Positions 1-47,815 of a stretch of 64,000 nucleotides of DNA are shown here, one piece after another (position 1 is the first letter of the stretch; each line of letters begins with the position of its first letter). The notes below the pieces were generated by a model. The model was not told the origin of the DNA. It did no database searches and saw nothing but the letters and a program-made list of their open reading frames with translations. A program made the position numbers and the translations under genes. The stretch covers positions 2,666,001 to 2,730,000 of the forward strand of contig OZ281495.1 of NCBI GenBank assembly GCA_965637545.1, given 5' to 3'. This DNA comes from Phallusia mammillata (lineage: Eukaryota).

Positions 1-537
1 ACGTTAAGAAATCAGGATTGGGAAATATAGTTTATTTTATTGATTATTATCTATATTTTCCCCTATCGTTTGCATGTTATTAAAAAAACAAAATTTTGTT
101 TTGATTTAAAAAGGTAACAAAAATGTCAATAGAAATGGCGCGTGGCTCTGGTGAGAAAAAATGACAAATTTATTTTACTGGGAAAAATAATTTTGTTTAA
201 AATCAGTTACCAGGTTGGAGAAAAAAATCCTCCATGCAAAATAAACAAACGAGCAACTGTAGAAATAGCACAATTATGTCGTCACAAACTGGTAATTACG
301 TCATATAGACTAACATCAGAGTACTTTTAGATTCTAATTTTAACACGTGGTCGTCTTTATCGGTAATATATCAAAAAATAATTAATAAACCAAAATAGGC
401 ATTTAACATTAACAAACACATATTTATCTCCAAAAAAGTATTGCTTTACATGAACCAGTGTCAAAATTTAATTATTTGGTTTTATTTATTTTTTATTTCA
501 TGAAACTTGAAAAACATCATTTTTTATTTTCCTGCAG

Positions 538-1298
538 ATCAAACTGACGAATTCAATCAACACATTCAAAATTACGTTGATTCATTAAATACAAAAAAGT
601 ATGACGAAGCAAAAATGACAAAACAACAACTCTCAAGGTCAATCACAGGTCAACCAGGGGTCACTGCAAAAAACCTGGAAGAAAAAGCCACGAAATTTAG
701 AGATGACGGAAAATATTTGGAAGCCATTTTGTTTTTTAGCATTGCCGCAGATTTCTATCTGAAGAAAAATCCCGACTCCGCTGTAGCGAAAAGTGTAGCT
801 CTGTGTGCGATGAGAATTCAAAGCACAATCAAACTTTTGATGAAAAATTCTGATTCATCTTCGAAGTCGAGAAACATAGAAATCGTGCGCGATCATGTGA
901 TCCCACTGATGCGTGACATGATTCAGCAAATCCGCGACCTTCAAATAAACGAAGAAATTCGATGTGAATGGGAGGTTTGGTGTTTGGGTCACATTGAAGT
1001 GTGTCAACGTCTCATAGGGGATTTGAAATCGAGCGAAACAACAATAAAACTTGGACTTGAACTTATGGAAACAAAGTTCGGGAATGAAAGTTCAAAGTAT
1101 CAGATCTACGGTGGCTTGTTGAACAATCTTGGTGGTGTTTACGGTGAAACTTCACGATTCAAACAAGCAATCGAATGTTACACAAAAGCAATCGAAGTTT
1201 ACAAAACAGCGGAGGATTTAACTGAGAAACAACGAGGAGACGAGATTGCAATAAGTGAAAGGGGTTTGCAAATATGCAAAGCGAAGTTGATCAAGTGA
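538..1298 (+). CDS. U0: terminal TPR-domain exon of a kinase-linker-TPR paralog (5' part lies upstream of the window)
   Basis: Acceptor tttcctgcAG at 536-537, phase 1. Open to TGA 1296-1298. TPR motif YGGLLNNLGGVYGETSRFKQAIECYTKAIEVYK. Same length (761 nt) and acceptor context as the U1 terminal exon 25698-26458. The ORF-track start at 507 is intron sequence. Confidence 0.85.
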
Positions 1299-2433: not shown

Positions 2434-2833
2434 GGGTGACACTAAAACGCTGAATGGGCGGGACGGGCGGGACGTCGCGGGAGATGGCGGGACGTCCTGA
2501 AAACCGTTAAATATCGGGTTCAATTGCAGACGGTTAGAGCTATTAAGGTTGGGATAAGGTTTTATAATAGAAAATCATTAAAAAAAAAAATTCCGCCGGA
2601 CACTACATTTCGCGCCTGAAACGTCCCGCCATCTCTCGCAATGTCCCGCCATAGCATTTTTGCCTAATGTCAGGAAATAGTTGAATAAGTTTTAGGCAGG
2701 GACATTTTTTGATTCATATACTATTATAAAACCTCAAGCTCAACCCAACCCTAATAGCACTAACCGTCAGCAATTAACCCGATATTTAGCGGTTTCCGCG
2801 ACGTCCCGCCCATTCAGCGTTTTAGTGTCACCC
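2434..2833. mobile_element. ~400-bp non-autonomous TIR element (MITE)
   Basis: ~32-bp TIR GGGTGACACTAAAA(A)CGCTGAATGGGCGGGACG. Flanking direct repeat TTTTTAGG at 2426-2433 and 2834-2841 (9 bp if the adjacent C is counted). Inserted in a relic of the family seen at 26880-27345. Confidence 0.85.
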
Positions 2834-3563
2834 TTTTTAGGCTGGTTCGGTACATCACTAGCTGTAACCACAGATTTTATATTCCTCTAGTTTAGATCAT
2901 CTTCAATATAACTCTGTTTAAAAAATATATTTTAAACAAGGTCACTGTGACCAGAAAAATAACGCACACAGAAAAAAGTGAGCTTTTAATATTTGTTTGC
3001 ACTTAAAGTATGACGTCACAATCATACAGTAAATACTTGTGACATCACAACACAATTACCCAATCAGACCGAAAATCTTACCTTACTGGATTTTGATATC
3101 TTATTAAGGTCAGTTGTAGCTTCGTTTGTGGATTGACAGTTCCTGAAAACACATTTCAATCCATGACCAACAAACACATTTTTTGTTTCAGGGGCTAGCC
3201 TGGGTGTAATCATGATCACGTGATACCCCTGATGCATAACGGTAAGCACTTAATGTAAAGCGGCAGGTCCTGAGTTACAAAAATAACAATCAAAATGGAA
3301 CGCGCTTATGACGTCATAACCACACTCCCGCACTACTTGTTTAAGCTATTTGCTACTTGTTGCACAGGGTAAATGATGCGGTATAAACATTTTTTGCTAT
3401 ATGTTTCAATATTTTTAGTGATTTTTTTAAAGAAAATATTAGTATATAGATGTAAAACAAGGATAAATGAAAAAGATAGTCGCTGTCGGACTTTAAAGTT
3501 AAATAATTAATTAGGCTTTTAAGTGTTTGACATTACACAAAAAATTATTTTAATTGGCACCAA

Positions 3564-3939
3564 GAGTACCGGATTAAGGGTCTGCTGGCCTGTAGGCACT
3601 TTTTATATGTGGCCCGAAAATCAGGGTTGCCAACTAATAAATTAGAATTATCAGTTTTGCCACATCATTGTCACAAAGATCGTCGTTGCAACTATAACTC
3701 AGGGTACCGTGCAAAAACTTGGTCATATGCCTAACTAAATTACAACTTTGCGCGTTTTTGCGATTGAAAACGCGTTAACTAGTTTTTGGAGGTCAATCTT
3801 ACCGAGTAGATCACTTTCAATACACAAAATAATTATTTTGAAAACATGACTAAATTTCTAATGATTGTAAAGTGGCCTGGATTTTTGACTAGCCTGTATA
3901 GGCACGATCCTACTTTGCCTAATGGTTAATCCGGCACTG
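3564..3939. mobile_element. hAT-type MITE, 376 bp
   Basis: TIR GAGTACCGGATTAA vs CAGTGCCGGATTAA (12/14). 8-bp TSD GGCACCAA at 3556-3563 and 3940-3947. Confidence 0.8.
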
Positions 3940-5424
3940 GGCACCAATGTTGGTTCTTAGCCACAATACAAATTTCTAATCATATACCCAATGTGGAGTT
4001 TATCCAGTAAAATTGCACACAACATTTTTTGCATTTTGGCTGCATAAAATGTTAATATTTGTTATAGCTTGTGTGAGCTTTTTACTGGTTACTTTTAACT
4101 TGTATGGCAATGTTACATAAAGAACTGTTGCATTAATTTTATTTTGCAACAAATTAAGATGCAGTACATAGTTGTTAAAAACGTCATGCACAAATTTAAA
4201 TTACAGTATAAAACACAGCAGAACCAAAAACCTGTTTAAGATAAAATAATGTCTTTCATTTTGCAAATAAGAACATTTGTTCTCCAGGGATGCTGAAGGG
4301 ATACAACCACATGCACACTATTTTGCAATTTACTGTTTGCCAAACACAAAGAAAATAATGCAGAAAGTTTGAAAATTCATTTTCATTGTTGCTTTACTTT
4401 TAAAGTTGGTTTTAAATTTCTCAATTAATATGATGTTATAGTCTTATAATAGTAGTCAAATTTTGTAGATTGTTTACTTTTGTTAAGCTTTCTCTTTTTT
4501 TTTCAATTCACCATAGTATGCCTGTCATAAAATGTTTAGTTGGGTTGGCTTGTACCGATTTTTTAGTTTGGGTAAAATAGTGGTAGAGCTAGAACATATT
4601 TGTAGTTCTTGGGTCACATGCAAACAGCAAGCATCCTGACAATGACAAAAAAGAAAAGAAACATTTCAAAGTAAAACTGATGTAAAATACTGCAAAGTTT
4701 GACTGGAACTGTACTTGTCACACTTTTATCTTCAAACTTGTGTGTTTGGAGCAACTTGGAGGTTCATCTGAATTGCCGGAATATTTCAATTTGGGAGTTT
4801 TTTGTTTTAAAGTAACAAGTTTGCATTTCAAAACCATATAATAAACCGATTTTAGATGTCCTTTATCACTGACTTTGGTGTTTGGAAAAAAGTGCTTTTC
4901 CTTGTGAAGATTTGATAAGGTTTGGCTATGACAGTTCAGTTGGTTGGCATCCAGCAGGTATATGAGATAATAGATTGATCGTAAATAGAAAGTATCTGTT
5001 CTCCCAGTAAATCTCTTATTTATTTATCTAAAAAATAAAAAAAATAGGCGGTGGCATGTATTATTAGGAATTAGGATATGACTGGCATGCATTAGCTTTT
5101 ATAAAATTGGGCTATACTGTACACAAACTTACCACAAGTATACTTGTATCATATATGATGACATAGTTGGCGCAGAAGTCACAGGACACAACAGGTTTAC
5201 TTAACAACAGCGCTCCTGTATGTACAGATAACAGATAAGTCTAAAAACCAGACATTTTTACTTAATAATGATGCAATAATCACAAAAACATTACTTGTTA
5301 CTTACCACTAGCAGGCTACAACTGAAAATTGTAGAATCGACTACTGTTCGGTGTAACTAGGCGTATCACAGCATTTAACAAAATGGACTATATATTGTCG
5401 TATGATTTCCACGTCTCAAAAAAC

Positions 5425-20549: not shown

Positions 20550-20700
20550 TAAGGACTGAGGGTGGGTATTGACTTCGAAACTTAGGACAATTACAGTGTA
20601 GGATCGTGGGTTCAAGTCTCAGCGGAGGCCAGATTTTTTTCATCCTATGCCTCGTGATGTGGGAATGCTTGGTACCCCTGCTTGGTATAACGACTTTAAT
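20550..20700 (+). mobile_element. Possible degenerate tRNA-derived SINE
   Basis: B-box-like GGGTTCAAGTCTCAGCGGAGGC near 20609-20630. No clear A box, cloverleaf or TSD. Confidence 0.3.
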
Positions 20701-20850
20701 AGGTCATGTATAAAATGGTTTCTGTGTACAGTAATTGTGTCATGATTGTTGGTCTGTATAAACGCTCCAGGGTTTATTCCAGTAACGTATATGTGTTTAT
20801 TTGTGTAGTGAAAACTTTAGTTAAGATTTGCCTACCTGAACAAAACAAGA

Positions 20851-23800
20851 ATGACATCAACAAATGAGGTAAGTAAATGCTGAGGATATTTGTTGCTTTC
20901 TCAGTGAATATTTGGCTAAAAGCGTGGGAATTTATCTTGATATGTCCGATATGGTTTGCATTCAAGTGATTTATTTGAAAAAGCTATGAAAACAAACGAG
21001 CCAAATCCAATTAGAAAGCCACTGACACCGTAAATCACATTAGATAAAAGTTTACTGCATGCCCATAGATGGCGTAAAGAGCAGTTAATAACAGCGTATT
21101 GTTAAGTTTTTCATTTACTTATAATGTAATCATTAATACGCAACGTCACTCAGTCAAAGCAGCCTTAACTGTTTCGTAGAATTTTTTTTTAAACCAGGTA
21201 TTTATAAAGTGCTCTTTGTGCAAACTTTGTCTGCTGTGAGTGATAATGTTTGTAAATTTTCCTGTTATCATGTAAATCTCTTGTGCGCAGTTAAGGGAAT
21301 TGGACTGTGGTGACATCACTTGTAACCTTGACGATTTCATGGCCGGTTCAGGAGGTTTCGGGGATGTTATATTTGGATACCACAATGGGTTAAAGCAACA
21401 AGTTGCCATCAAAGTATTTAAGTTGGCTGGTGGAGCCCAGGAAAAGACACAAGCCACAAAAACGTAAGTTATAAGAATTCCTACACAACACAATAAAATC
21501 GCCACAGGCACTTTATTCAAAATATGTTCTTCAGAATTAAAGAAGAAATGGAACACTTGCTGAAAGCAGATCATGAAAATGTCGTTCGAATTTTTGGCTA
21601 CGTCCAATGGTCTTTTGCAATGGGAATTGTGATGGAATACTGCAAGGGGGGAAATTTAGAAACACTACTAATCGATACATCCAAAGAACTGGGCATTGCC
21701 GTACGCGTTCGTATTTTATACGAAATAGCATCAGCAATGGCTTTCTGTCATAATTTGCCCGATAAACGTTTAATTCATCAGGACTTAAAACCTGGAAATA
21801 TTTTGCTCACTAAAGCACTAAGCTGTAAATTGGCTGATTTTGGAAGCGCCGAACTGGCAACTTATAGTATTTCGGCAACTAGGAATCCTTTGGCACGAAC
21901 CAAGAAAGAAAAGCCTCAATACACTCCCTACTACACCGCTCCTGAAAAACTAAAGGATCTTCTCACAAAACCTAACAAGGAACATGACGTTTACGCATTT
22001 GCTATGATATTATACTGGGTTCTTGCTTGTAAAGCCCCGTATCCACGTCTGGCAGAAGAAGAGCGAAGAGAGTTGTTAGAGGAAATTAAGAGAGGAAAAA
22101 GACCAAACTGCCAACAAATACGGGATTGGATGCAAACTTTGGTCGGTGAAGACAAAGAAATCGCAGAGCAACTCCAACTACTGATGAAGCGATGCTGGGA
22201 TCAAGATCCCACAAAACGTCCCACAATGACTGAAATAAAAAAAGAATTGAAAACGCGTTTGGATAAGCAACAAACCACCAAGCTACTTTCTCAAGTTTTG
22301 ACGACTTTGACTCAAATGAATTTGGACGAGCAACCGCAAGTCATCGAAGGTCGACGCGTTCCTCTTCACTATTTTTCAACCTGGTCCGGAAGTTTTCATG
22401 GTAAAATAGTAATAGAACAATAGAAAATTATTTTAACAAACGATAACTCCCACCCATAACAGAATACATTACCCAGGTTGGAGATAATTTGTCTCGTAGA
22501 AACTTATTTTATCCTAATAATGTTGTTGGTTAAGATGTTGCCATTTCTTGTGTGGCAATTTTAACTGTGGTAGTAAAATCTTTCTTATTTTTAGTTCCTT
22601 CCACATCAGTTGACACCGATAGACAACCATCGGGACCGACAGAGGGGGCACTAGAGCAAGTGCAATCTTCTTCCCAACAAGGCAAAGCTTCTACATCCAG
22701 CAGAAAACAGCAGAAGGGTACAAGATCTATTGAATGGAATTTCGCTCAACTGATAATGTCAACAGTTACATTTATGACACTTTTTAGCTGTTTTGAGTGT
22801 AGAGCAATATCAAACAAACGTTTTGTGTAAATTTTTAATTGATTTAGATCCCACTAGTCACGGTACCGCGGAAAGCTCCACTACACCAGTACAAAAGTTA
22901 ATTGCTCGTTTCAACAGCATATCAGCACAGCAATCTGGAGGTATAACCATCACAAATTCACACTTTGCACAAATTGGTCCGTGTTTTGATTTTCGTGCAC
23001 TTGACGTTACAAAAGCTAAGTATATGATAAGACGTGAAAAAGAATAGGAAGAAATAACCATTTACAAGCAACAATCCAGCACCAGTTTGATAAAAAATAA
23101 ATTTTACTAGTTCTAAACCACGGGGCAATGGACTCAAAAGAAAGAAAATATGTTTTCGTGGGTCCAGAACCTTTAATCTGTTTTGATAATGACACGTTTT
23201 ATTGCGCTAGTTAATGGTTGGTATAAAGCACAACCATTTCGAGAACAGAAAAGGTTAAGAATCACTGGCAACTGACACAGTTTCACCTGAACGTTTTAAC
23301 TTTTAACGGAAAGTTTTTAAATGATAACTTGACAGTTGTTGGGAATTATTTAGGAAAAACAAAACATAATCAGAAAGGAAAACACAAACTAATCTTGCAA
23401 CATAAATTAAATAGTGTATATTTGTAAAACATGTTTTTAGAGCCATCCACTTCCGATGACGCAAAGAAACGTTCTATCAAACCAGCGGGGGGCGCACCAA
23501 AGCAATCACAATCCCGTTTTTCTCAACAAGAAGAAATTCCCACCACCAGCAAACCACAGGAACCTGGTATGAGATGCATTAACTCGGGAACTTAGAGATA
23601 ATTAAACATGTTGATTGAATTTATTACATTTGATTACTCTGTGACAAACGTATTTGCAAACATTTTTTTTGAAAATCATCTTGTTCGAATTTATAATCTT
23701 TAGATCCTATCATACACGATGATGAGAAAATGCCCATTGCACCACGAGAGGAAATCGCTCATTCCAGCAGCACATCACCACAGGAACCTGCAGGTAAACC

Positions 23801-26458
23801 AACAACAAAGTCATAGTTTCTACAATAGCCCGAACATGGATGTTTGTAAAGCCGTCAATGAAAATTTATTTGCAACAAGCCACAACCAGTTTAATGGAAA
23901 ATTAATATTTATCTAGTTCTAAACACCGAGTCAATGGACTCAAATAAGGAAAATCAACTGTAGAGTTTGTGTGTGCCAGGTCTACCCCACGGCGTGCAAA
24001 ATATGTTTTTCTTCAATCTGGTTTCATAAGTACACATTTTTTATTGCGTACCATAATGGTGAATGTGAGATTTTTAGTTCCATCCACTTCAGATGACAAT
24101 AAGGAACGTTCTGATGCACCAACAAGGGGCGCACAAGGGTCATCATAATTTTAACGATTTGTTTGCATTGGATGAATGATTTTTCTAAAATACTATTTTA
24201 TTCTTAATCTATGTTTTTTAGATCCGTTTAGAGACGGTGACGAGAAAAGACTAATGCCACCACGTGAGGAATTCGCTCATTCCAGCAGCACGTCACCACA
24301 GCAACCTGCAGGTAAACCAACAAACAGTTGCTAAGAGTTGCAAATGCACCTTTTCAAAACAAAAGAAAAAAGTACAATCACCAACAGAAATATTGTCTAT
24401 ATGTCGTCAAAGAAATATTTATCGTTTAAAATTCTATTTTTCTGTAGATCCTATCAGACAAAATTCCAAGAAACGCTCGACAACATTCTTACAAAAGATA
24501 TTCCCCCGTTTTGGCAAAACATCACCAAAGCAACCTGTAGGTAAAGTGGATTTGATCTTGTGTAGCCTACTGGCATCCAAAAGCTGCAAATATAACGTTT
24601 TTTGTTGTCCGTATTTTTTTCCGAACTTAACAGCCAACCAGTTTTGGTATGGGAGCTTATCCTGTTAACGGTTATGTTTTAACGAGTAAAAAAGCGTTTC
24701 CGAATTTGTAAACGGTCAATTGTCAATTTACCATTTTTTTAGATCGTATCAGTCACGACAGAAACTTTAGATCTTGCAAACACTAATTTAACTTTGTTTA
24801 AACCTTACCGTTGTTAATGATGCCGATTGCAGCACCTTTTTTGCTGTCAATCAAAAATTAAATCGAAATTGTCGTAATAAACTTCGTGAATCCTATAATA
24901 TGAGTTTGACGTCATAAATTTGTTTTTATTTATTTTCGTCACAAAACATGAAGCAGTGGAACTTTTAGGTGCAGCGGGCGTGAAACAGCAAAAATGTTTC
25001 CAACGAAATTCGAAATTTTGTCAGAGCGTTCTTAAAAATTATTGATTAAAGACGGGCCTACGTGATATCAATGAGTGGGTTAAAGCAAAATTGTTAACAT
25101 ATTGGAGAAGAGATGTTACGCCCAAAAGTGTGATTTAGCCTACGTCTGTTTATATCTTATCTTAAATTATCCAAAAATTAAACCACTAATTTTGCCTAAA
25201 TGCAACTATTTTCCAAAGTAACTATAGGGTATTTTGATCCATAAATTGTTTTAAACTTACACCACGTTAGAATTTTATCATTGGGAAATAATATATTCGT
25301 ATTATTCCTGATACTAGGCCTGCTTTTAAAACAACAAAATTCCTGTTTGTATCTTAGAATGTGACAAACATGTCAATAGCTCTGGCTCTAGTGGGAGACA
25401 AAACTGACAAGCTGATTTCGTACAAAAAATAATTTTGTTTAAACTTTTTTACTAAATTGGAGACAAAATGTCACACTGCAAAAAACCAAATATTTAGCAT
25501 TATGTCGTCAAAACCTTGTTATTATGTCAGGGTTATTTAAAAGTTAAATTTAAAATTTTTTGGTATTTAACACTAAAACACATTTATTACTATAAAATGG
25601 CTTTACATGAACCGGTGTCAAATTACGATCAGTTTTTTTTTTTTGTTTTTTATTTCTTGAAACTAAAATAAAAACATCTTTTTTTATTTCCCTGCAGACC
25701 AAACCGACGAATTCAATCAACGCATTCAAAATTATGTTGATTTATTAAAAACAAAAAAACTCGACGATGCAAAAACGACAAAACAACAACTTTTATGGTC
25801 AATCACAGGTCAACCGGGAGCCACTGCAGAAAATCTGGAAGAAAAAGCCACGAAATTTAGAAATAAAGGCCAATATTTGGAAACCATTTTGGTTTTTAGT
25901 ATTGCCGCAGATTTCTATGTGAAGAAATTTTCCGACTTTACTGTAGCGAAAAGTGTAGTTGTGTGTGCGCTGGAAATTCGAGAAACAATCAAACTTTTGA
26001 TGAAAACTTCTGATTCATCTTCGAAGCCGAGAAACACAGAAATTGTGCGTGTTCACGTGATCCCACTGATGCGTAAAATGACTCAGCAAATCCGCGACCT
26101 TCAAATAAACGAAAAAATTCGATGTTATTGTGAGGTTCGGTGTTTGCATAACATTGAACTGAGTCAATATTACATCGGGGATTTATCATCGAGGGAAACA
26201 ACTATAAAACTTGGACTTGAATTTATGGAAACAAAGTTCGGGGATGAAAGTTCAAAGTATTCTATCTACGGCTCTTTGTTGAACAATCTTGGTGATGCTT
26301 TTGAGAAAACTTTACGATTAAACGAAGCAATCGAATATTACACAAAAGCAATCGAAGTTTACAAAACAGCGGAGGATTTAACTGAGGAACAGCGAGGAGA
26401 ATATATTGCGACAAGTGAGGTTGGTTTGCAAGAAACCAAAGCAAAGTTGAACAAGTGA
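20851..26458 (+). CDS. U1: RIPK-like Ser/Thr kinase + repetitive linker + TPR domain, 10 coding exons, 810 aa
   Basis: Exons 20851-20868 (MTSTNE), 21291-21463, 21535-22400, 22595-22717, 22848-22940, 23441-23566, 23704-23793, 24222-24311, 24448-24540, 25698-26458. All introns GT-AG with compatible phases; total 2433 nt, no internal stop. Motifs GSGGFGDV, VAIK, EEMEHL, IHQDLKPGNIL, ADFG, YTAPE, CWDQDP.KRP. Confidence 0.85.
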
Positions 26459-26879
26459 TTAACGTTGCTACAAAACAACTAAAGTGTTTGTCTGTGATAA
26501 AATTATTGCGAAACAAATTGATACCGTAAATTAATTTTATGTTTAATATTATGCTTTTTTGTGCAAAATTGCTTTATATTAGTGACGATTTTTTGTACTA
26601 ATGTAAAAATTATACTTACTTTTCAAAAAATTGATGAAAAATGTTTTGGGGAGATATTTTACTTTATAGAATATAGCAGCTTGAGAATATAAGTTTTGTA
26701 AGTATGTTTACGGCACACAGATCACATATAATGAGGAAGCGCAAAACATGTTTTTACATCACAGCAGGTATGATTAAACCCAACCTGAAGTTTTTGCATA
26801 ACCCTTTCTATCTGTCGCTCAATTTCGGCTTAAATGATTCCAAGTGTTTCAATTTGTTTTTATCGCTGTGGACCAAAAG

Positions 26880-32200: not shown

Positions 32201-33569
32201 CTCGGTAACGGGACAGTTTAGCTGAATGCATTTTGTCATTATACAAGAAAAATTAACAGTGCATTGACTTTTATCAAACTTATTGTCTTGTGAACCAACA
32301 ATTTTTTTAGTGCCCTCCACATCAGGTGAGAAACAATCCACTAAGCCAACAAAAGGCGCACGTAAGCTCGTAAAGACACGAGAGGAATTTCCCACCTTCA
32401 AAACACAACAACAGCAACCTGGTATAAGATGTATTGAAACGTTGGAAAGTAGTTATCGTTTAAAATATATAACTGGCAACGCTAAAAAATCAGTGTTTTT
32501 AAACAACATTTTTGAACGAAACATTTGATCAAAATTAATATTTGTTTAGATCCAATCGAACACGATGACGAGGTACGCTCCATCGCATCATTAAAACTAA
32601 TTGCCAGTTTCAGTAGCACATCTCCACAGCAACCCACAGGTAAACTAATCACAAAGCGACGCGGTATAAAAAGTATTACCTCGTCTACTGACTTTTAAGT
32701 GCTTGACCTTGTAAACAGAATATTTGTATTAGTATTTTCTTGACACCTGCAATGCAGTTAAAACAGCACTCTCATTTTTCTCAGATGGAAATGTCGACTT
32801 CAACCAACGCATACACAGTTATTTTGAGTTATTAATATCTGGAAACGCTGGAAAAGCAGAAAAGATTAAAAAACAACTTTTAAAATCAATCGAAGGACTA
32901 CCAGGGCTCACCGCGGATAACTTAATCAGAAAAGCTAAAAAACTTCGATATGACGGCAAATATTTGAAAGCCATTTTGTTTTTTCGCATTGCCGCAGATT
33001 TCTATGCGAAGAAAAATCCTCACCTTACTGTAGCGAGAAGTGTAACTGTCCGTGCATTTGAAATTCGAGATACAATAGAACTTCTGATGGAAAAATCTGA
33101 TTCAACTTTTAAGTCAAAAAACAAAAAAATTGTGCGCAATCACGTGATTCCACTGATGCACGACATGACTCGGCAAATAAGCGATCTTCTAATTAACCAA
33201 AAAATTCGATGCGAATGGGAGGTTCGCTGTTTGGGTTGTATTGCCTGGAGTCAATATTACATCAGGGATTGGACATCGAGCGAAACAACAATAAAACGTG
33301 GACTTGAACTTATGGAAACAAAATTTGGCAATGAATGTTCGAAGTATCGAATCTATGGTACCTTGTTGAACTATCTTGGTTTTGTTTGCGAGGAAACTTC
33401 ACGACTCGAAGAAGCAGACGCAAATTACACAAAAGCAATCGAAGTTTATAGATCAGTGAGAGATTTAACCGAGGAAGATAAAGAAGAAAGAATTGCAAAA
33501 GGTGAAAGGTATTTAAAATCCAACAAAGCAAAGTTGGACAAAATTACAAATTTGCTGCAAAAACAGTGA
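29240..33569 (+). CDS. U2: kinase-deleted paralog; putative linker+TPR protein (~399 aa from ATG 29501) or pseudogene
   Basis: Exon-1 homologue ATGGCTACAACGAAACAA|GT (29240-29257). Decayed exon-2 relic ~29310-29390 abutting the decayed end of exon 3 (~29405-29537, donor kept). Open phase-1 exons 29884-29976, 31356-31439, 32311-32421, 32550-32639 and TPR exon 32785-33569. 29501-29537 plus these exons = 1200 nt in frame. Confidence 0.6.
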
Positions 33570-38214: not shown

Positions 38215-41200
38215 ATGACGTCAGCGAACGAGGTAAATATTTGCTTATGTGTTGAGGTTATTATGTTATGTTTGAGGTTAACATATGTTGAGGTTATTTT
38301 TTTTTGTTTTTTGGGGAGCAAGATTTTGGCCAAATGGCCCGGCGCGCCTTACCCATTTTCAGACATAAATAACCCTGATCGCGATTCGTACCTGGGAGTG
38401 TCCTGGGTTCGAAACCCGTCAAAAAAGAACTGTGATCGGTAGAGATTGGGGATTTGAGCTAAAATTGCTTTTTTCTGTTCCTTTGTATGTTGTTGATACG
38501 AAACATCACCTGCGAAGCTGCATCACCCCTAGATATTTTTACCTGATATTTCTACTACAATATACAGCAGTACTACTTAAATAGTTCATATAGAAAGAGT
38601 AAAGATTACCAAAGGTCCGGTCACTTTTGTCAGAAATGCAACTGGGCACTAAACATGAATTTACTTTCTCCCTTCCCCCGCTTTGTTAATTGTATAGTGG
38701 AAATGTCGACCATTTTTGTCACAGTTGGGCAAATCAGATTTTGGAAAGACTTATACTACGTTTCCATGTCGCGAGTTTGGGCCAAGTATTTGGGCCATGT
38801 GACCATATTTGGAAGTGAAAAACATGACGCAGCAAAATTACTTGGCCCAAACCGAATTTTTTTAGGCCATCTAATTCAAGTGGTTTAAACTCAGTTTAGG
38901 CCATGTATGTTTTGGGCCATGTTTTTGTTGTGAACCGTTTACATGTATTGCAAGCTTGAAAGTGCCGAACAGCGCAGTTATATTCGAAAGTTGAGTTAAA
39001 ACATTATATCAGAGCTTAATTTGGAATTGAGAAGTACTTTTGCCAACGGATGTATATTGCTAGCATTCAGTATAGTGATTTGAAAGGCATTACAGTAGAT
39101 GTATGCATGTAAATATGAACAGAATTGAATAATAAGTTGTGCAACCTGTACGCCATGAATTATTTCAGGACAAGATTCAGCACTACAAAATCACGTTTCG
39201 TTTTTGTTGGCAATGTCAGGAAAAGCTGATGATACTTAATTTTATAAGATACAGGTGAGTTAAAATCCTCAAAACATTTTATGAACTACATTTAAATCTT
39301 AGTTATTATGTGAAACAAGTTCCATCACTTTTGCTATTTCAACATAGTTTGCATAAAATGCCCTGGCAGGCAACATGAAGCAACTTAATCTAAATCAGTC
39401 AATTGGCTTTGTTGCAATACCTAATTGTTGATTATTTTGTATATGGTCATGTGTTTACTGAAGGAACAGCCATTTCTTCAATGATTTGGGTGATGCTGAC
39501 CCAGTCCACTCAATACTTACTTTACAAGATCATACTTAGTAGCAACAGGGTAGTACTTAAAACTATCATTGAAAATACTTCCGAAAGGTTGTGGTGATAT
39601 GAATTTTGTAAATTGTGATATGTACATCTTCTGTCTATTTTTCTTGTTCTGGTGCATCAATTATTGGTGACTACTTTATTGAAAACTGTTTTTAGCGTTT
39701 TAATTATATTCTATCATTTCTGTGCATTGACTGTGTAATAAAATCACCAATGGTAGTTTAAAAATTGTTCAAATTTTTGTATTGCAAATTGAAAACAGAC
39801 AAAATAGAGTCACAGTATTAACACAATCACTTCATTCGCATACATAGAGAGAATCATTAACTGGTTTGCTGGAAAAACAGCTTGAGTTCTTGCAAGTGAT
39901 TGAGTAGTTCTTGGTTGTCAAGCCTAAAAGCAAAAATTAATTTAGTAAATAACTGTTTTCTGTTAAGTGTAAAGAAACAACAGTTAGATTGTTGCCTTTA
40001 TTAAACAAGAAAAGAATGTGTAGAAGCACACATAAATGTTTAAACACCAATAACACATAACTGTGCAAGGTTGAAATAAGTCATTAAAAAATGATTACTA
40101 ACACAAAATAAGCAAGTCTTACCAAGCACAGTGCATCTGGTCCTTCTTTGATAAAGGTTGTTCTTACTTTAAAACTTCCTATTACTTTGTTTATCTCCAA
40201 AAACTCTAATACATCAAACTAGTTTCTTAGTAATAGACCTGCTCATTTTAGATAACAGCAGTATCAACTCTCTATCTGTAGAAGCTAATTTTCGTAGTTT
40301 TTTCAAATCCTAATTCACTCAAGTCAGCTTACGATGAAGAAGTTAATTTGTAGGCAGCACAGTTTGTTGTTTTTATTACATTCCAAAGCCTGTTTACCAT
40401 ATTTCGTTTTAGTTTCGAATCCCGCGAGGCAGGCAACAGATCGCTGTACCACGTTACGCTTGACTGCGTTAGCGACATGGAAACACGACTCGTTTTTGGC
40501 GCTAAATTCAAAACATGGACATAACAGTTTGGGCTAAGCCAAAACGCGACATGGAAACATAGTATTAGACTCCTCAAAGTCCCTCGATCAAATGCTATGC
40601 GAACCTCAGTTTAAAAACTATCGCTAAATAGCAATGATCAAGTAATTAACACACAAATAATTGTCTATATGTTGCCGTAACCAAATGACCGTCAAACGCC
40701 TCAAAGGTCCGGATATGGACCGGGGTCCGCCATTTGAGAAGCCCTGCTATATCGAGATAACAATCATACATAAAATTTCTTATGCATTTCCCTACTTACT
40801 TCAAAGGCACAAAATTACCTGTAAACTTTGAAAAATGATGCACTGGCACTGTTTGCATCAGAAAATATTGTTTTAATTATAATTTTGAAATCAAGAAGAA
40901 AATTGTTAATGCCCAAATTATTGTGTTTGGTTTGTCGCCGTGCAAGTAAACAAAATACACAAATGATACGGTCTGTTGTTTACACTCATGTGCATTAAGG
41001 CGTGACGAAAACACGTCACAAAGTAGCTGCAAGTTCAAGCGTGTATTATTTTTTTTTTTAAAACTGGGAGCAGCACCCCCAACAATTTTAAGCACGAGTC
41101 GCCTTTGCCAAATAGCCTAAACCAGTGGTTCTTAACCTTTTTATAACGGCCGAACCCTTACGATATTCTTCAGCCTTTGGTCGAACCCCAAAGTTACATC

Positions 41201-44200
41201 CCAGGTTTTTGCCCCATTTTCTTTGGTGGGTCATAATTAGTTTTTGTTCAATCGTAATGGCAACAGTTACTGTTTGTCATTTTGTTCAATTCTGACATAA
41301 TACAGTAATACAAGCCACTTGTTTCATAAGTGCTTTAATACCGGCAATTTTTTGCTTTACCAAAATAAAGCATTGTATCTTTAGCATCTGTACACAAACA
41401 TGAAAAAGATGAAGAAATAAGTTTTTGCTGTCAACAAAATTTCGTTGTGTTTCTGCTTAGGAACAACGCGAACAATGCTCTTTGTTACGTCAAAAAAGAA
41501 ATTAAAACCTTAGTGCAGGGGTGCACCTGCATCGCAGATTCTTATTTCACCAACGACCGCCTGCTTATTTTTGTTTTGTTGATATTATGTATTTACCATC
41601 TAATAGCGCCCAAAAAGCCCAAATTAATTTCTAGCTCGGTACACAGATTGGCTGCACAGCGAGGAGATCACTTAAGTGTTTATTATGTCATAATCTATAT
41701 TGTGATGCTTGTGGTACCTGTTTTGTTCGCATTGTTGGCACACAATAGGCGTACAAAACGTCTGATACATATAGTTATTAGGCTGGTAATACTCTTTTTA
41801 GTGCCACAAAAACTGTTTCGAGATGTTTAAAACAGCCCTGCCTAAGTTTAACCTTCCAGGGTTTTGATACACTAAAGTCAAAAACGAGTATTTGTATTGC
41901 ACTTCAAAAATACGTTCGATCGAACCCCAGGGGTTCGGCAACGCCGAATCCCGGTTAAGAACCACTGGCCTAAACCGTTTCACAGAAATTTCTTTTGAAA
42001 GAGGTATTAGTGCTCTTTGCGTTTTATACCTATTTTTTTACCAAACTTTGTCTCATGTGAGTGCTACCATTTGTATATTCTCATCTCTTCTGTACAGTTA
42101 CGGGAATTGGACTGTAGTGACATCACGTGCAACCTTGATGACTTTGTGGCCGGTTCAGGAGGTTTCGGGGATGTTCTATTTGGATACCACAATGGGTTAA
42201 AGAAGGAAGTTGCCATCAAAGTATTTGAGGTAGCTGGTGGAAAAAAGAAAAAATCACTCGCTGTGAAAATGTAAGATTTGTCACATACAAAACCACCTTA
42301 GCAAAATTGATTGAAATATTCTTTAGGATAGAGGAAGAAATGGAACACTTGCTGAAAGCAGATCATGAAAATGTCGTTAAGATTTTCGGCTACGTTCAAT
42401 GGTCTTTCTCAATGGGAATTGTGATGGAATACTGCAAAGGTGGAGATTTAGAAACACTACTAATGGATACATCCATAGAACTGGACCTTGCTGTGCGCCT
42501 TCGCATTTTATACGAAATAGCATCAGCATTGACTTTCTGTCACAACTTGTCAGACAAACGTTTAATTCACCAGGACCTAAAACCTGGAAACGTTTTGCTT
42601 ACCAAAGAACTAAGCTGTAGATTGGCTGATTTTGGTTCCGCCGAACTGGCAACATATAGTATTTCGGCAACTGTGAATCCTTTGGCACGAACCAAGAAAG
42701 AAAGACCACAATATACTCCCTACTACACCGCTCCGGAAAAATTGAAGGATCCCACCATGAAACCAAGGAAGCAGCATGACGTGTATGCATTCAGTATGTT
42801 ATTGTATTGGGTCTTGGCTCGTAAAGCACCTTATCCACGTCTGGCAGAAGAAGAGCGAAGGGGGTTATTGGAATTAATTAAGAGAGAAAAAAGACCAGAC
42901 TGTCGAGAAATACAGGATTGGATGCAAACTTTGGTCGGTGAAGACAGAGAAATCGCAGAGCAACTCCAACTACTGATGAAGCGATGCTGGGATCAAGATC
43001 CCACAAAACGTCCCACAATGAATAAAATAAAAAAAGAATTAAAAAAGTATTTAGACAAACAGAAAACCAAGCTACTTTCTCAAGTTTTGACAACTTTGAC
43101 TCAAATGGATTTGGACGAGCAACCGCAAGTTATCGAAGGTCGACGCGTTTTTCTTCATTATTTTTCAACCAAGTCCAGAAGTTTTCATGGTAAAATATTA
43201 AACACACAATAGCGGTAACTTCCGCGAGAAACAGAATACTTTACCCAAGTTGGAGATAGTTTGTCTCGCGGAAACTTATTTTATCCTAATAAAGTTGATG
43301 AATAAGATGTTGCCAATTGTTGTGTGGGGATTTTTTATTATGTTCTGTGGTAGAAAAGTCTTTAATATTTTTTAGTTCCCTCCACATCAGGTGACACCGA
43401 TGGACAATCATCTAGACCGACAAAAGGCACACGAGAGCAAGTACAATCTCCTTCCTATCAAGACAAGGTGTCTCCATCCAGCAGACAAAAGAGGGAGGGT
43501 ATGAGATATATTGAATTGAATTTCGTTCAACAGATATTGCCAACAGTTACATGTGTGACACTTCTATCTGTTTGTGTTGCTGAACATTTTCAAACAAACG
43601 TTTTGTGCAAATTTTAATTGATTAGATTCCACCAGTCACGTTGCTGCAAGACGCTCCTCGACGTCAGTACGAAAGTTAAACACTTTGGGGTGTATCGTGT
43701 AATTGTGCACTTGACGTTACACAAGCTAAGTTCATAATGACATAGCGTGAAAAATAATAAGAAAACATAAAAATTTATACGCAACAATCCAGCACTAGTA
43801 ATCTTATTAACTTTTAGTAATCTTATTTAATTGACAATAGCTGAATATTCGGTGACAAACGATTTGTTTGCATTGGATAAGTGATTATTTTAAACTATTA
43901 TTTTATTCTTAATTGATGTTCTTCAGATCCAGTTGGACACGGTGATGAGAAACGCCCCACTGTACCACAAGAGGAAATCGCTCATTCCAGCAGCACATCA
44001 CCACAGCAACCTGCAGGTAAACCAACAAGCAGTTGCTAAGAGTGGCAAATGCACCTTTTCAAAACAAAAGAAAAAAGTACAATCAGCAACAGAAATACTG
44101 TCTATATGTCGTCAAAGAAATATTTATCGTTTAAATTTTTTTTTTGTATATCCTATCAGCCAAAATTCCAAGAAACGCTCGACAACATTCTTGAAAAAAA

Positions 44201-46278
44201 TATTCCCCCGTTTTGGCAAAACATCACCAAAGCAACCTGTAGGTAAAAATGTTTGATCTTGTGTGCTGGCATCCAAAAGCTGCAAACATAACGTTTTTTG
44301 TTGTCCGTATTTTTTGTCCGTGCTTAACAGCCAACCAGTTTTGCAATTATTATGGTTCAAGCAACGAAATAGTTGATTAGTTTGTTGTCAATCACATATT
44401 GCAACACATTGCCAACTGTCAATTAATTTAATAATTGTAACTAATTTGCTGTGGGGATCTTAATGTAATTCCACATGTTTGTTGACGTCGATACTAATAT
44501 CTACTCTTAACTACCAATTAAATTGTTGTAAAAAAATCTTTTTTGAGATTTTTGTGTCTTTGCCAGTTTATTCCGTGAAAAAACAATCCAACAATCCAAC
44601 AAAGGGCGCACATGAGGCAGTACAAACTTAATTTTAACAAATGGTAATTCCCAGAAGCAGCTATCTGGTATGACTGCAATGACTTGTTCGAACTCATCCT
44701 GTTAACAGTTATGTTATAACCACCGACTAACGAGTAAAAAAAACGTTTTCGGCATTATAAACGGTCAATTGTCAATTTACTATTTCCTCAGATCGTATCA
44801 GTCACGACCCAAACGCTCGATCTTGCAAACACTAATTTAACGATGTTTTTACCTTAACCAGGGTTGCCATTGACATGGATCCCAAAATAAGGACACCCGA
44901 AAAATTAAATTTTAGACAAAATGAAGCCAACGTTTTAAACAATCTTTACACTGCTATGAGCCATGACATATTACATGCCATATATGTTACCAGAAATAAT
45001 CCATTTAAGCAACTCTTTGTTCGTAGAAAATACGAGTATCTTACGAGTTACGACAGCTCCGGTCTAGGTTTACTTTTACTTTAAGCAGGAATCTGATTGT
45101 TATTTCGGTACAAAATAAGGAATCAGATCAAAAACAAGGGCATTTCTATAAATAAGCACAATAAATTTTACTAAAACATTGCCCTTCGAAATAAAGCCGA
45201 TGGCAACATCTTTTCCACTGTCAATCAAATCATTAATTAAAGCGAATCGCGGTAACAAACTTCGTGGAAATCCTAAAATATGAATTGACGCCATTAATGC
45301 CCCTGGTGCGTGATGTACACTGCGTGGAATTTATCTTGTCTTTGTCATATATTGCATAAGATAAAACCTCTAAGTTTCCTTTTTTATTTATTTGCATCAC
45401 AAAAACATAAAGCAGTGGAACGTGTGGTCGCAGCTCAAGTTTAGTAGGCGAAAAACGTCTACAAATTTATTATTTATTTCTTATTTTTTGGAACTAAAGG
45501 AAAAAATATTTACTTTTTTGCAGACGGCGAATTCAACCAACGCATTCAAAACTATATTGATTTATTAAAAACAGAAAAGTATGACAAAGCAAAAACAACA
45601 AAACAACGACTTTCAAGGTCAATCACAGGTCAACCAGGGGTCACTGCAGAAAACCTGGAAAAAAAAGCCACAAAATTTAAAAATGACAGCAAATATTTGC
45701 AAGCAATTCTATTTTTCAGCATTGCCGCAGATTTCCATGTTAAGAAAAATCCCGGCTTTGCAGTAGCGAAAAGTGTAGCGATATGTGCAGAGGGAATTCG
45801 CGACACAATCAAACTTTTGATGAAAAATTCTGATTCATCTTTAAAGACGAGAAACAAAGACATCGTGCGCGATCACGTGATCTCACTAATGCGTGACATG
45901 ACTCAGCAAATCCGTTGCCTTCAAATAAACGGAAAAATTCGAAGTGAAATGGAGGTTTGGTGTTTGCATTCCATTGAACTGAGTCAATATTACATCGGGG
46001 ATTTGGCATCGAGGGAAACAACAATAAAACTAGGACTTGAACTTATGGAAACAAAGTTTGGGAATGAAAGTTTAAAGTATTCAATCTACGGTTACTTGTT
46101 GAGCAATCTTGGTGTTGTTTGCGGTAACACTTCACAATTCAAAGAAGCAATCGAATATTTCACAAAAGCAATCGAAGCCTACAAAACAGCGGAGGATTTA
46201 ACTGAGGAACAACGAGGAGAAGAGATTGCAAAAATTAAGAGGGGTTTGCAAATATGCAAGGCAAAGTTGAACAAGTAA
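38215..46278 (+). CDS. U3: RIPK-like kinase + short linker + TPR domain, ~673 aa
   Basis: Exons 38215-38232 (MTSANE), 42098-42270, 42327-43189, 43376-43498, 43927-44016, 45524-46278; GT-AG, 2022 nt in frame. Linker exons at 43626, 44150 and ~44567 are damaged and presumed skipped. Confidence 0.8.
41123..41967. mobile_element. hAT/Charlie-type MITE, 845 bp, in U3 intron 1
   Basis: Perfect 15-bp TIR CAGTGGTTCTTAACC. 8-bp TSD GCCTAAAC at 41115-41122 and 41968-41975. Confidence 0.92.
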
Positions 46279-47690: not shown

Positions 47691-47815
47691 GATCACGTGA
47701 TCGCACTGATGCGTAACATGGTCCAATAAATTCGCAACTTACAAATAAAAGAAGAAATGCGATGTAAATGGGAGGTTTGGTGTTTGCATTACTATGAAAT
47801 GAGTCAAGGCAACAT
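47691..47815 (+). pseudogene. Relic of a further TPR exon
   Basis: Translates DHVIALMRNMVQ*IRNLQIKEEMRCKWEVWCLHYYEMSQ, homologous to DHVIPLMRDMIQQIRDLQINEEIRCEWEVWCL, with an in-frame stop. Its counterpart at ~3214-3240 (DHVIPLMHN) is interrupted by the 6-kb TIR element. Confidence 0.8.

What the first reader, a model, noticed from the sequence alone, without database searches (positions are those of the whole stretch)
20851..26458. Candidate undescribed intracellular receptor kinase: RIPK-like kinase, modular disordered linker, variable TPR sensor
Seen: the separate 'kinase' and 'TPR' ORFs join through phase-compatible GT-AG exons into one 810-aa frame, and the same exon order recurs in U3 and U4. 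Known: RIP kinases carry C-terminal DD, CARD, RHIM or ankyrin modules, and TPRs serve as sensor repeats in NLR-like proteins of fungi and bacteria. I know no characterised RIPK with a C-terminal TPR domain. Inference: a single-chain sensor-kinase family, with the TPR as diversified detector or autoinhibitor and the kinase as conserved output.
Basis: partly seen in the sequence, partly recalled or inferred. Interest (0 to 1): 0.88.

Follow-up and report, generated by a model that had tools for sequence, protein, structure and literature searches.

The report
Sea-squirt RIPK-like kinase with variable TPR
This stretch is a real sea-squirt gene that joins an immune-type (RIPK1-like) protein kinase, through a flexible linker made of mini-exons, to a helical TPR domain whose binding groove varies sharply between its many sister genes; this fits an undescribed intracellular sensor-kinase family, but its function is untested.

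Summary
Ten GT-AG exons (20851-26458, +) give one 810-aa frame, provided a 61-nt pseudo-exon (24078-24138) is skipped. The parts are a RIPK1-like kinase, a disordered linker of six phase-1/phase-1 cassette exons, and a 252-aa TPR-fold domain.

The genome is the ascidian Phallusia mammillata. Public transcript-derived proteins of paralogues carry the kinase tail, cassettes and TPR in one ORF (P0153, P0006). RNA contigs show the exon 1-2, 2-3 and 3-4 junctions in paralogues. No transcript of this copy itself links kinase to TPR.

The genome holds at least 146 TPR exons and at least 135 kinase exons. About 70 pairs sit kinase-then-TPR on one strand, including paralogues only 33-45% identical.

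Selection differs between the two domains:
- **Kinase:** N/S 0.93, and HQD and DFG are kept.
- **TPR:** N/S 3.6. Twenty-seven hypervariable sites lie mostly on alternate helices, at the canonical concave ligand-binding positions.

So "conserved kinase, diversified TPR" is supported. The ligand, the activation mechanism and an immune role are inferred.

The TPR domain is tunicate-wide and uncharacterised. It also ends membrane proteins and stand-alone proteins, and the kinase can instead carry an SH3 domain. I found no paper describing the family.

The scan met this family before on other DNA of this genome (s1-399058, s1-364006), and those follow-ups agree.

The parts
20851..20868 (+). Exon 1: start codon and 6 codons (MTSTNE), donor GTAAGT
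   Evidence: There is an in-frame TAG 33 nt upstream. The exon and about 110 nt upstream are conserved with U3 at 38215-38232. An RNA contig loose end and P0154 both read MASTNE joined to exon 2 in paralogues.
21291..21463 (+). Exon 2: kinase N-lobe start (GSGGFG glycine loop, VAIK lysine)
   Evidence: AG/GTAAGT boundaries. Weak Pfam Pkinase match, E 0.022. RNA contigs join it to exon 3 with exactly the 47 exonic letters expected between 21421 and 21540.
21535..22400 (+). Exon 3: rest of the kinase domain (HQD non-RD catalytic loop, DFG, APE) plus a conserved post-kinase tail ending PLHYFS..SFH. The donor leaves phase 1.
   Evidence: Pfam Pkinase 1e-37. RIPK1 is the best PDB match at 2e-30, and scores 150 bits with the family profile. 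An RNA loose end behind 22398 continues into a PSTS-type cassette.
22595..22717 (+). Linker cassette exon (VPSTSVDTDRQ... type), phase 1/1
   Evidence: Its homologue in U3 is 43376-43498. The same cassette type follows the kinase in P0153 and P0154.
22848..22940 (+). Linker cassette exon (DPTSHG...FNSISAQQSG), phase 1/1
   Evidence: The donor position is conserved in six paralogues. A related cassette occurs in P0154.
23441..23566 (+). Linker cassette exon (EPSTSDDAKK... type), phase 1/1
23704..23793 (+). Linker cassette exon (DPIIHDDEK...AHSSSTSPQEPA type), phase 1/1
   Evidence: Its U3 homologue is 43927-44016.
24078..24138 (+). Degenerate PSTS-type pseudo-exon: 61 nt, donor GTCATC, frame-breaking if included
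   Evidence: It is left out of the 810-aa model.
24222..24311 (+). Linker cassette exon (DPFRDGDEK...AHSSSTSPQQPA type), phase 1/1
24448..24540 (+). Linker cassette exon (DPIRQNSKKRS...), phase 1/1
   Evidence: The U3 homologue at 44152-44247 has lost its acceptor, AG to AT.
25698..26458 (+). Last exon: 252-aa TPR-fold domain (11 helices) and TGA stop. It enters in phase 1. The first in-frame ATG lies about 100 codons in, so the domain cannot be translated whole on its own.
   Evidence: AF2 pLDDT 95.6, pTM 0.92. Foldseek matches LGN/Pins, KLC and NASP TPR domains. One Pfam TPR_1 motif at residues 194-221. RNA contigs cover it. Hypervariable sites lie on helices 5, 7, 9 and 11.
38215..46278 (+). 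U3: paralogous gene with the same architecture, intact at 673 or 695 aa
60656..63859 (+). U4: exon 2, kinase exon (61424-62287) and three cassettes. The rest lies beyond the window.
   Evidence: Its kinase is 92% identical to the transcript-derived P0154.
531..1295 (+). U1: TPR exon of the upstream paralogue. Its kinase lies about 5.6 kb before the window start.

Best explanation
Window 20851-26458 is one protein-coding gene of the ascidian Phallusia mammillata. Ten GT-AG exons encode an 810-aa soluble protein with no signal peptide or membrane helix.

**Anatomy**
- Residues 1-353 are a RIPK1-like Ser/Thr kinase. GSGGFG, VAIK, DFG and APE are intact, and the catalytic loop is non-RD (HQD).
- About 205 residues form a Ser/Thr/Pro-rich, presumably disordered linker built from six interchangeable phase-1/phase-1 cassette exons.
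- The last 252 residues are a TPR solenoid of 11 helices (about 5.5 TPR-like repeats), encoded by one phase-1 terminal exon.

**Family**
The gene belongs to a tandemly arrayed family with at least about 70 kinase-then-TPR pairs. Within it the kinase is held by purifying selection. The TPR has accumulated replacement changes at a few positions on alternate helices, and these are the positions that line the concave ligand groove of a canonical TPR.

**Most likely working**
The TPR groove of each paralogue binds a different short peptide or protein ligand. Occupancy then controls the tethered kinase by recruitment, clustering or release of inhibition. The kinase relays the signal as RIP kinases do.

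**Shown:** gene structure, junctions in paralogue transcripts, kinase affinity, fold, family size and arrangement, and selection pattern.

**Inferred:** ligand binding, the activation step, the downstream pathway and an immune or non-self role.
For: **Gene model**
- The 810-aa frame is built entirely from GT-AG exons.
- Exon 1 is conserved with U3, and U3 is intact with the same architecture.
- Deep paralogues L002 and L003 keep the phase-1 donor, one cassette and the phase-1 TPR exon.

**Transcripts**
- P0006 (Phallusia CAB3263277.1) equals my spliced L003 model residue for residue.
- P0153 carries the kinase tail, cassettes and TPR.
- P0154 carries MASTNE, the kinase, cassettes and SH3.
- RNA-type contigs lie only on exons. 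They show the exon 1-2, 2-3 and 3-4 junctions in paralogues that are 92-99% alike.

**Kinase**
- Pfam Pkinase 1e-37.
- Family profile against PDB: RIPK1 150 bits, RIPK4 118, RIPK2 113, RIPK3 98, Src 96, IRAK4 91.

**TPR**
- AF2 pLDDT 95.6.
- Foldseek hits are LGN, KLC, NASP, 14-3-3 and Rap, with TM 0.5-0.62.

**Family**
- At least 146 TPR hits and at least 135 kinase hits in the genome. They are paired on the same strand 0.4-14 kb apart (paired by eye, about 70 pairs).

**Selection**
- Pairwise dN/dS is 0.20-0.27 for the kinase and 0.53-0.86 for the TPR.
- Parsimony counts for 23 kinase exons: N 463, S 497. HQD is kept in 21 of 23 and DFG in all 23.
- Parsimony counts for 26 TPR exons: N 782, S 217. 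Twenty-seven sites hold N 318 and S 5, and 23 of them lie on helices 5, 7, 9 and 11.
- In the one canonical repeat these sites are TPR positions 2, 9, 12 and 13. PMC1261162 identifies these as concave ligand-face positions.
Against: - No transcript of U2 itself spans kinase to TPR. The laid contigs are 50-350 nt, mostly from paralogues, and none lies on U2's linker exons.
- There are no expression, induction or biochemical data.
- The TPR domain occurs without any kinase in two Phallusia membrane-protein genes, in a disordered 856-aa ORF and in every named Ciona, Styela and Clavelina protein tested. Its basic role therefore cannot depend on this kinase.
- The kinase-TPR fusion was seen only in Phallusia.
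- The codon test is a home-made parsimony count. It has no recombination control, the sites were chosen by their N count, and gene conversion among tandem copies is likely.
- I had no model coordinates. Mapping to the concave face is therefore inferred from helix alternation and from one Pfam-aligned repeat.
- At least one paralogue (L003) has lost the catalytic Asp and DFG, so kinase activity is not universal in the family.
Confidence: 0.6

Rival explanations
1. The TPR domain is a signalling connector rather than a sensor. It would be a docking module, playing the part that death or TIR domains play elsewhere. It would couple TPR-tailed membrane receptors and TPR-only adaptors to TPR-tailed kinases, and its variable face would set pairing specificity between family members.
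For: The same domain ends Sushi-like single-pass membrane proteins (P0151, P0002; gene at C2:5.266-5.274 Mb). It also ends a disordered 856-aa ORF (L001) and short stand-alone proteins in Ciona. This spread across receptor tails, adaptors and kinases matches that of homotypic signalling domains.
Against: Only two membrane-TPR genes were found, against about 70 kinase-TPR genes. Strong diversification at canonical peptide-groove positions fits many different ligands better than a few partners. The self-association fold test gave no verdict, which is not evidence either way.
Confidence: 0.2
2. The TPR domain is chiefly an intramolecular regulator of the kinase, as proposed for plant BSK kinases. 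Alternatively it is a 14-3-3-like reader of the kinase's own phosphorylated Ser/Thr-rich linker. On this view the family serves a non-immune purpose, and its variability reflects relaxed constraint after tandem duplication.
For: Kinase plus C-terminal TPR is a known regulatory layout. The linker is rich in Ser, Thr and Pro. The fold search also returned 14-3-3 proteins. Outside the hypervariable sites, N/S is 2.2, or omega about 0.7, which looks like relaxation.
Against: Relaxation alone would not give N 318 against S 5, concentrated on one face of alternate helices, while core residues and all reading frames stay intact in over 100 copies. The TPR domain is older and more widespread than the fusion, so it did not arise as a regulator of this kinase.
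Confidence: 0.12
3. In this particular copy the kinase and TPR exons are not one functional gene. U2 is a silent or decaying duplicate, or it yields separate kinase-only and TPR-only transcripts, even though paralogues are true fusions.
For: No U2-specific contig covers its linker, and most laid contigs differ from U2 by 1-8%. U2 carries a frame-breaking pseudo-exon. An exact mirror copy exists at C2:2786434-2791691, so redundancy is high. P0154 shows that kinase transcripts can end before a TPR.
Against: All ten exons are open and all splice sites canonical. Catalytic motifs are intact, and kinase dN/dS against U3 and U4 is 0.23-0.27. A few contigs match U2 exons 3 and 10 without any difference (records 2, 8, 11, 26). 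The TPR exon has no start codon of its own.
Confidence: 0.08

Closest known systems
Vertebrate RIPK1 (and RIPK2-4)
   Same: The kinase domain is nearest to RIPK1 among all solved kinases, followed by RIPK4, RIPK2 and RIPK3. The catalytic loop is non-RD. A long disordered intermediate region is followed by a C-terminal protein-interaction module.
   Different: The C-terminal module is a TPR solenoid, not a death domain, CARD, RHIM or ankyrin repeat. No conserved RHIM is present. The family has dozens of tandem copies rather than a single gene. Orthology to any one RIPK was not tested.
Amphioxus RIPK-like expansion (PMC9573974)
   Same: A lineage-specific tandem expansion of RIPK-like kinases in an invertebrate chordate, with shuffled accessory domains that include SH3. 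Phallusia P0154 likewise has a C-terminal SH3.
   Different: The amphioxus forms are reported with LRR, DEATH, SH3, ZU5 and Zalpha domains. No TPR is reported, and tunicates were not analysed in that paper.
Plant BSK kinases (RLCK-XII: kinase plus C-terminal TPR)
   Same: A cytoplasmic kinase of the RLK/Pelle-IRAK/RIPK-related group with a C-terminal TPR domain on the same chain (my own knowledge; the Pfam family TPR_BSK1_C exists).
   Different: There is no significant match to TPR_BSK1_C (best E 0.31, in U1 only). The kinase is nearest RIPK1, not the plant RLKs (CERK1 66 bits against RIPK1 109 bits). BSKs are few, conserved and membrane-anchored by a lipid (myristoylated), not a hypervariable array.
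Bacterial Ser/Thr kinases with TPR_12 (for example the Acidobacteriota cluster in the ESM Atlas; mycobacterial PknG from my own knowledge)
   Same: Pkinase followed by TPR repeats in one chain. The TPR fold is similar, with TM 0.55 (row 10).
   Different: The kinase lineage is unrelated, and there is no cassette-exon linker and no paralogue diversification. The resemblance is one of architecture only.
TPR-sensor NLR/STAND proteins of fungi and bacteria, and plant kinase-fusion resistance proteins
   Same: A variable repeat or integrated domain serves as detector, coupled to a conserved signalling domain. The genes form large tandem families with diversifying selection on the repeat surface. 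This is a resemblance in logic, drawn from my own knowledge.
   Different: No NACHT or NB-ARC domain is present. The output here is a RIPK-like kinase, and the organism is an animal.

Membership tests
RIP kinase family (RIPK1-4 type, TKL group) | Kinase domain closer to RIPKs than to other kinase families | tested here: met
   With exon 3 alone, phmmer gives RIPK1 2e-30, RIPK4 7e-23, RIPK2 2e-20 and Src/RIPK3/CERK1 about 2-3e-17. With the 7-sequence family profile, RIPK1 scores 150 bits, RIPK4 118, RIPK2 113, RIPK3 98, Src 96 and IRAK4 91.
RIP kinase family (RIPK1-4 type, TKL group) | C-terminal death domain, CARD, RHIM or ankyrin module | tested here: not met
   Pfam on the last exon and on P0153 and P0154 finds only TPR or SH3. 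A RHIM-like string just past the exon-5 donor is intronic and not conserved in six paralogues.
RIP kinase family (RIPK1-4 type, TKL group) | Placement inside the RIPK clade in a kinase phylogeny with IRAK, MLK and LRRK outgroups | not tested
   No reference kinase sequences were available to the script environment. Only ranked similarity to solved structures was obtained.
Catalytically competent protein kinase | Glycine loop, VAIK lysine, HxD catalytic loop, DFG and APE motifs | tested here: met
   GSGGFG, VAIK, HQDLKPGN, DFG and APE are read directly in the model. HQD is kept in 21 of 23 close paralogues and DFG in all 23. Activity itself cannot be tested here.
TPR superfamily | Sequence match to a Pfam TPR model above its curated threshold | tested here: inconclusive
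   In U2, TPR_1 scores 27.3 bits against a cut-off of 27.8, at one motif (residues 194-221). In U1 it scores 29.8 bits and passes.
TPR superfamily | Right-handed solenoid of paired antiparallel helices | tested here: met
   The AF2 model has 11 helices, pLDDT 95.6 and pTM 0.92. The best structural matches are the LGN/Pins, KLC1/2 and NASP TPR domains, at E about 3e-4 and TM 0.5-0.62. Atlas matches are all TPR families.
Plant BSK kinases | BSK-type C-terminal TPR (Pfam TPR_BSK1_C) on an RLCK-XII kinase | tested here: not met
   TPR_BSK1_C reaches E 0.31 only in U1 and gives no hit in U2. The kinase is nearest RIPK1, not the plant RLKs.
NLR/STAND receptors | Central NACHT or NB-ARC NTPase | tested here: not met
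   No such Pfam hit in the kinase exon, the TPR exon, or P0153 and P0154, which include linkers.

The most novel reading that the evidence does not exclude
Phallusia carries a germline-diversified family of cytosolic receptors in which a hypervariable TPR groove directly recognises foreign or altered-self peptides and switches on a covalently tethered RIPK1-like kinase. This would be an animal counterpart of plant kinase-fusion and NLR receptors. It would have been built by exon shuffling of phase-1 cassettes onto a tunicate-specific TPR domain.
Probability: 0.3. Interest if true: 0.9.

Novelty: new variant of a known kind. Interest (0 to 1): 0.72.

Why it matters
RIP kinases are central switches of inflammation and cell death in vertebrates. 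Their pre-vertebrate history is poorly known, and tunicates, the closest relatives of vertebrates, were not covered in the comparative RIPK study I read (PMC9573974).

A family of about 70 or more RIPK1-like kinases, each tied to a TPR domain whose ligand groove is under diversifying pressure, would be a new way for an animal to couple recognition to RIPK-type signalling. It would also be a clear example of domain shuffling through symmetric phase-1 exons.

The hypothesis is directly testable in a tractable laboratory ascidian through expression after challenge, TPR ligand screens and kinase assays. Even if the immune reading fails, the tunicate-wide TPR domain is a large family of uncharacterised proteins that deserves a name.

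Tried and rejected
1. **Direct RNA link for U2.** Two run searches and the one read-laying run gave only short Logan contigs. They cover exons 2, 3 and 10 and show junctions 1-2, 2-3 and 3-4 in paralogues. None reaches from the linker into the TPR exon.
2. **TPR self-association.** Complex prediction with two copies scored 0.02 and gave no verdict. It is not evidence either way.
3. **RHIM.** The string ITNSHFAQIG just after the exon-5 donor resembles the RIPK1 RHIM core. However, it is intronic in the model, and six paralogues keep the donor but not the motif or the frame. I rejected it as chance.
4. **The 61-nt piece at 24078-24138 as an exon.** It breaks the frame and has a poor donor, so I rejected it.
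5. **Architecture search in public proteins.**
   - Two homologous-protein searches returned only Phallusia transcript ORFs.
   - The third was wasted by my too-strict E-value of 1e-30. It shows only that no protein of 422-1344 aa other than P0154 matches this kinase that strongly.
6. **Kinase next to TPR in other tunicates.** None was found at the Ciona locus L028 or on three metagenome contigs that look like tunicate DNA. Of the 20 long or mid-length TPR-domain proteins scanned with Pfam, none of the named ones from the other tunicate genera has a kinase. The only one with a kinase is P0073, from an unidentified contig. This does not prove absence.
7. **BSK membership.** Not supported.
8. 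**Genome-wide pairing of kinase and TPR hits.** I did this by eye, because the coordinate lists could not be passed to a script. The figure of about 70 pairs is approximate, and the kinase list is truncated (135 of 341 candidates scored).

Full report
**What is there.** ORF listing and direct reading of 20700-26600 show a 299-aa kinase ORF, a 193-aa ORF at the 3' end, and several short open pieces between them. Joining them at AG...GT boundaries gives ten exons:
- 20851-20868
- 21291-21463
- 21535-22400
- 22595-22717
- 22848-22940
- 23441-23566
- 23704-23793
- 24222-24311
- 24448-24540
- 25698-26458

Together they make 2433 nt, which is 810 codons plus TGA. All six linker exons start and end in phase 1. 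The kinase exon ends in phase 1 and the last exon starts in phase 1. An eleventh cassette-like piece (24078-24138) is 61 nt long with a GTCATC donor and would break the frame, so it is a decayed exon that must be skipped.

**Is the model real?**

*Conservation.* Exon 1 (MTSTNE, then GTAAGT) and about 110 nt upstream of it are conserved at 38215-38232, 4 kb upstream of the next paralogue U3. U3 assembles into an intact 673- or 695-aa protein of the same layout.

*Deep paralogues.* On other chromosome-scale contigs, copies that are only 33-42% identical (L002, L003) keep the same phase-1 donor at the end of the kinase exon. They also keep one phase-1/1 cassette and a phase-1 TPR exon, all in frame.

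*Public transcripts.* Transcript-derived proteins identify the genome as Phallusia mammillata and carry the junctions:
- P0006 (CAB3263277.1) is identical to my spliced L003 model, from the kinase tail through the cassette into the TPR domain.
- P0153 begins at an internal Met of kinase subdomain XI, as U2 would read there. It runs through PLHYFS..., then VPSTT... cassettes, into a TPR domain that is 65-69% identical to the window copies.
- P0154 reads ...MASTNE, then LQELD, the kinase, cassettes and an SH3 domain.

*RNA contigs.* Contigs from four RNA-type runs of one study lie only on exons 2, 3 and 10 and never on introns.
- One loose end reads ...ATGGCATCAACAAATGAA joined to TTACGA, which is the exon 1-2 junction.
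- One joint has exactly the 47 exonic letters expected across the exon 2-3 junction.
- One loose end runs from the kinase exon into a PSTS-type cassette.

Most of these contigs are 92-99% like U2 and so come from paralogues. What is missing is a read of U2 itself that spans kinase to TPR.

**The kinase.** Pfam Pkinase scores 1e-37. Among all solved structures RIPK1 is the best match (2e-30), followed by RIPK4 and RIPK2. Src, RIPK3 and CERK1 come next at about 2-3e-17. A profile of seven family members sharpens the ranking: RIPK1 150 bits, RIPK4 118, RIPK2 113, RIPK3 98, Src 96 and IRAK4 91. GSGGFG, VAIK, DFG and APE are present, and the catalytic loop is HQD, which is non-RD as in RIPK1, RIPK2 and RIPK4 (the RIPK comparison is from my own knowledge). 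HQD is kept in 21 of 23 close paralogues and DFG in all 23. One deep paralogue (L003) reads HSN and DIA and is probably a pseudokinase.

**The C-terminal domain.** Pfam sees a single TPR motif (residues 194-221 of the exon) at or just under threshold. With an alignment of 27 paralogues, AlphaFold2 gives an all-helical model of 11 helices with pLDDT 95.6 and pTM 0.92. Foldseek places it with the TPR domains of LGN/Pins, kinesin light chain and NASP, and more loosely with 14-3-3 and Rap proteins (E about 3e-4, TM 0.5-0.62). ESM Atlas neighbours are all TPR families, including a bacterial Pkinase plus TPR_12 cluster. So it is a divergent TPR solenoid.

**Family size and arrangement.** Searching the 240-Mb assembly gives at least 146 matches to the TPR exon and at least 135 to the kinase exon. 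Nearly all are open. They cluster on contig 2 (0.7-1.5, 2.6-4.0 and 5.3 Mb) and contig 1 (4, 6 and 33-36 Mb), with smaller groups elsewhere. Pairing the two lists by eye, about 70 TPR exons have a kinase exon 0.4-14 kb upstream on the same strand. These include copies with only 26-45% identity to U2.

**Modularity.** The domains are combined in several ways:
- The TPR domain also ends two Sushi-like single-pass membrane-protein genes (P0151, P0002).
- It ends an 856-aa disordered ORF (L001).
- It occurs on kinase-less copies such as 32760-33542 in this window.
- The kinase can instead be followed by SH3 exons. P0154 shows this, and in U4-type genes the SH3 exons lie between the kinase and the TPR.

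**Selection.** Pairwise Nei-Gojobori dN/dS is 0.20-0.27 for the kinase exons and 0.53-0.86 for the TPR exons of the window copies.

| Codon-parsimony count | Replacement (N) | Silent (S) | N/S | Sites with N of 8 or more |
|---|---|---|---|---|
| 23 kinase exons | 463 | 497 | 0.93 | 3 |
| 26 TPR exons | 782 | 217 | 3.6 | 27 |

The 27 TPR sites hold 318 replacement and 5 silent changes. Twenty-three of them lie on helices 5, 7, 9 and 11, spaced 3-4 residues apart, while helices 4, 6, 8 and 10 are quiet. In the one Pfam-aligned repeat, residue r corresponds to TPR position r minus 190. Its variable residues 192, 199, 202 and 203 are therefore TPR positions 2, 9, 12 and 13. Magliery and Regan found positions 2, 5, 9, 12, 13, 33 and 34 to be the variable, ligand-contacting positions of the concave face (PMC1261162).

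The caveats are that the method is crude, the sites were selected by N, there was no recombination control, and no 3-D mapping was done.

**Distribution and prior knowledge.** A full HMMER scan of 1.84 billion representatives with the TPR exon found whole-domain matches only in tunicates. The named genera are Phallusia, Ciona, Styela and Clavelina, and every hit is labelled "uncharacterized protein". Unnamed metagenome or Logan contigs also matched, and these look like tunicate DNA. Of 20 such proteins scanned with Pfam, none from the named tunicates has a kinase domain. The fusion may therefore be specific to Phallusia or its close relatives, but this is not proven. Five literature searches and a reading of the comparative RIPK paper found no description of a TPR-tailed RIPK-like kinase. 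That paper reports amphioxus RIPK-like genes with LRR, DEATH, SH3, ZU5 and Zalpha domains and does not cover tunicates. Two earlier notes of this scan describe the same family elsewhere in this genome, with follow-ups that agree.

**Reading.** The architecture and its evolutionary pattern fit a sensor-kinase: a conserved, probably active RIPK1-like kinase on a flexible leash to a TPR groove that differs between paralogues. I rate this 0.6. The gene structure itself is nearly certain, while the ligand and the role are inferred.

The main rival (0.2) treats the TPR as a connector between family members, prompted by its presence on membrane-receptor tails and adaptor-like proteins. An intramolecular regulatory role with mere relaxation (0.12) fits the site pattern poorly. 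U2 being a silent copy (0.08) cannot be excluded with the RNA at hand.

I class the finding as a new variant of a known kind. RIPK-like kinases with shuffled partner domains are known, and kinase-TPR chains are known in plants and bacteria. This combination, its scale and its groove diversification in an animal are not described.

Noticed in passing
G000:C2 about 2,606,000-2,876,000, centred near 2,739,445 (9.4 kb beyond the window end): The window lies in one arm of a large inverted duplication. U1-U4 kinase and TPR exons have exact mirror copies on the minus strand. For example, the U2 TPR at C2:2691700-2692455 is mirrored at 2786434-2787189. Only one TPR exon (2738021-2738776, minus) sits near the centre. 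This could be a real palindrome or an assembly artefact.
   Followed up: partly
window 24078-24138: A decayed PSTS-type cassette, 61 nt long with a GTCATC donor. It would shift the frame if spliced in.
   Followed up: yes
window 44152-44247: In U3, the homologue of the DPIRQNSKKRS cassette has its acceptor changed from AG to AT, so the cassette is probably skipped in that gene.
   Followed up: partly
L003 (G000:C1:13318000-13323000), kinase exon 1491-2327: This is a deep paralogue with HSN instead of HxD and DIA instead of DFG, so it is a likely pseudokinase. It is nevertheless transcribed and spliced to its TPR exon (P0006).
   Followed up: partly
G000:C2:5265925-5274169 and 5287183-5295105 (minus strand): Two genes encode a Sushi-like ectodomain, a membrane helix and a cytoplasmic TPR domain of this family (P0151, P0002). 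Related Sushi-like exons without a TPR extend over 5.4-5.8 Mb.
   Followed up: partly
G000:C2:2732218-2734087 (just past the window end) and many other family loci: SH3-encoding exons lie between the kinase and the TPR in U4-type genes. Transcript-derived P0154 ends after the SH3 domain without a TPR, which suggests alternative 3' ends.
   Followed up: partly
window 32760-33542 and 47526-47807: There is an intact but more divergent TPR exon with no kinase exon upstream within 6 kb, and further on a short TPR fragment.
   Followed up: no
L001 (G000:C1:23107000-23113000), ORF 2118-4688: A single 856-aa open frame has a long low-complexity N-terminal part and a TPR domain of this family at its end. 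It contains no kinase.
   Followed up: no
P0073 (unnamed Logan contig of 4175 nt): A 1186-aa protein with TPR_12 repeats, a protein-kinase-like domain and a Ribonuc_2-5A (KEN) domain. It resembles RNase L or IRE1 with TPR in place of ankyrin repeats. The organism is unknown.
   Followed up: no
window 22941-22990: The intron just after exon 5 would read ITNSHFAQIG in frame, which resembles the RIPK1 RHIM core. It is not conserved in six paralogues.
   Followed up: yes
TPR exons versus kinase exons of the C2 array: Silent changes per codon are about half as frequent in the TPR exons (0.86) as in the kinase exons (1.73). Replacement changes are more frequent in the TPR exons. This may reflect exchange of TPR exons among neighbours, or it may reflect the different gene sets sampled.
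   Followed up: no
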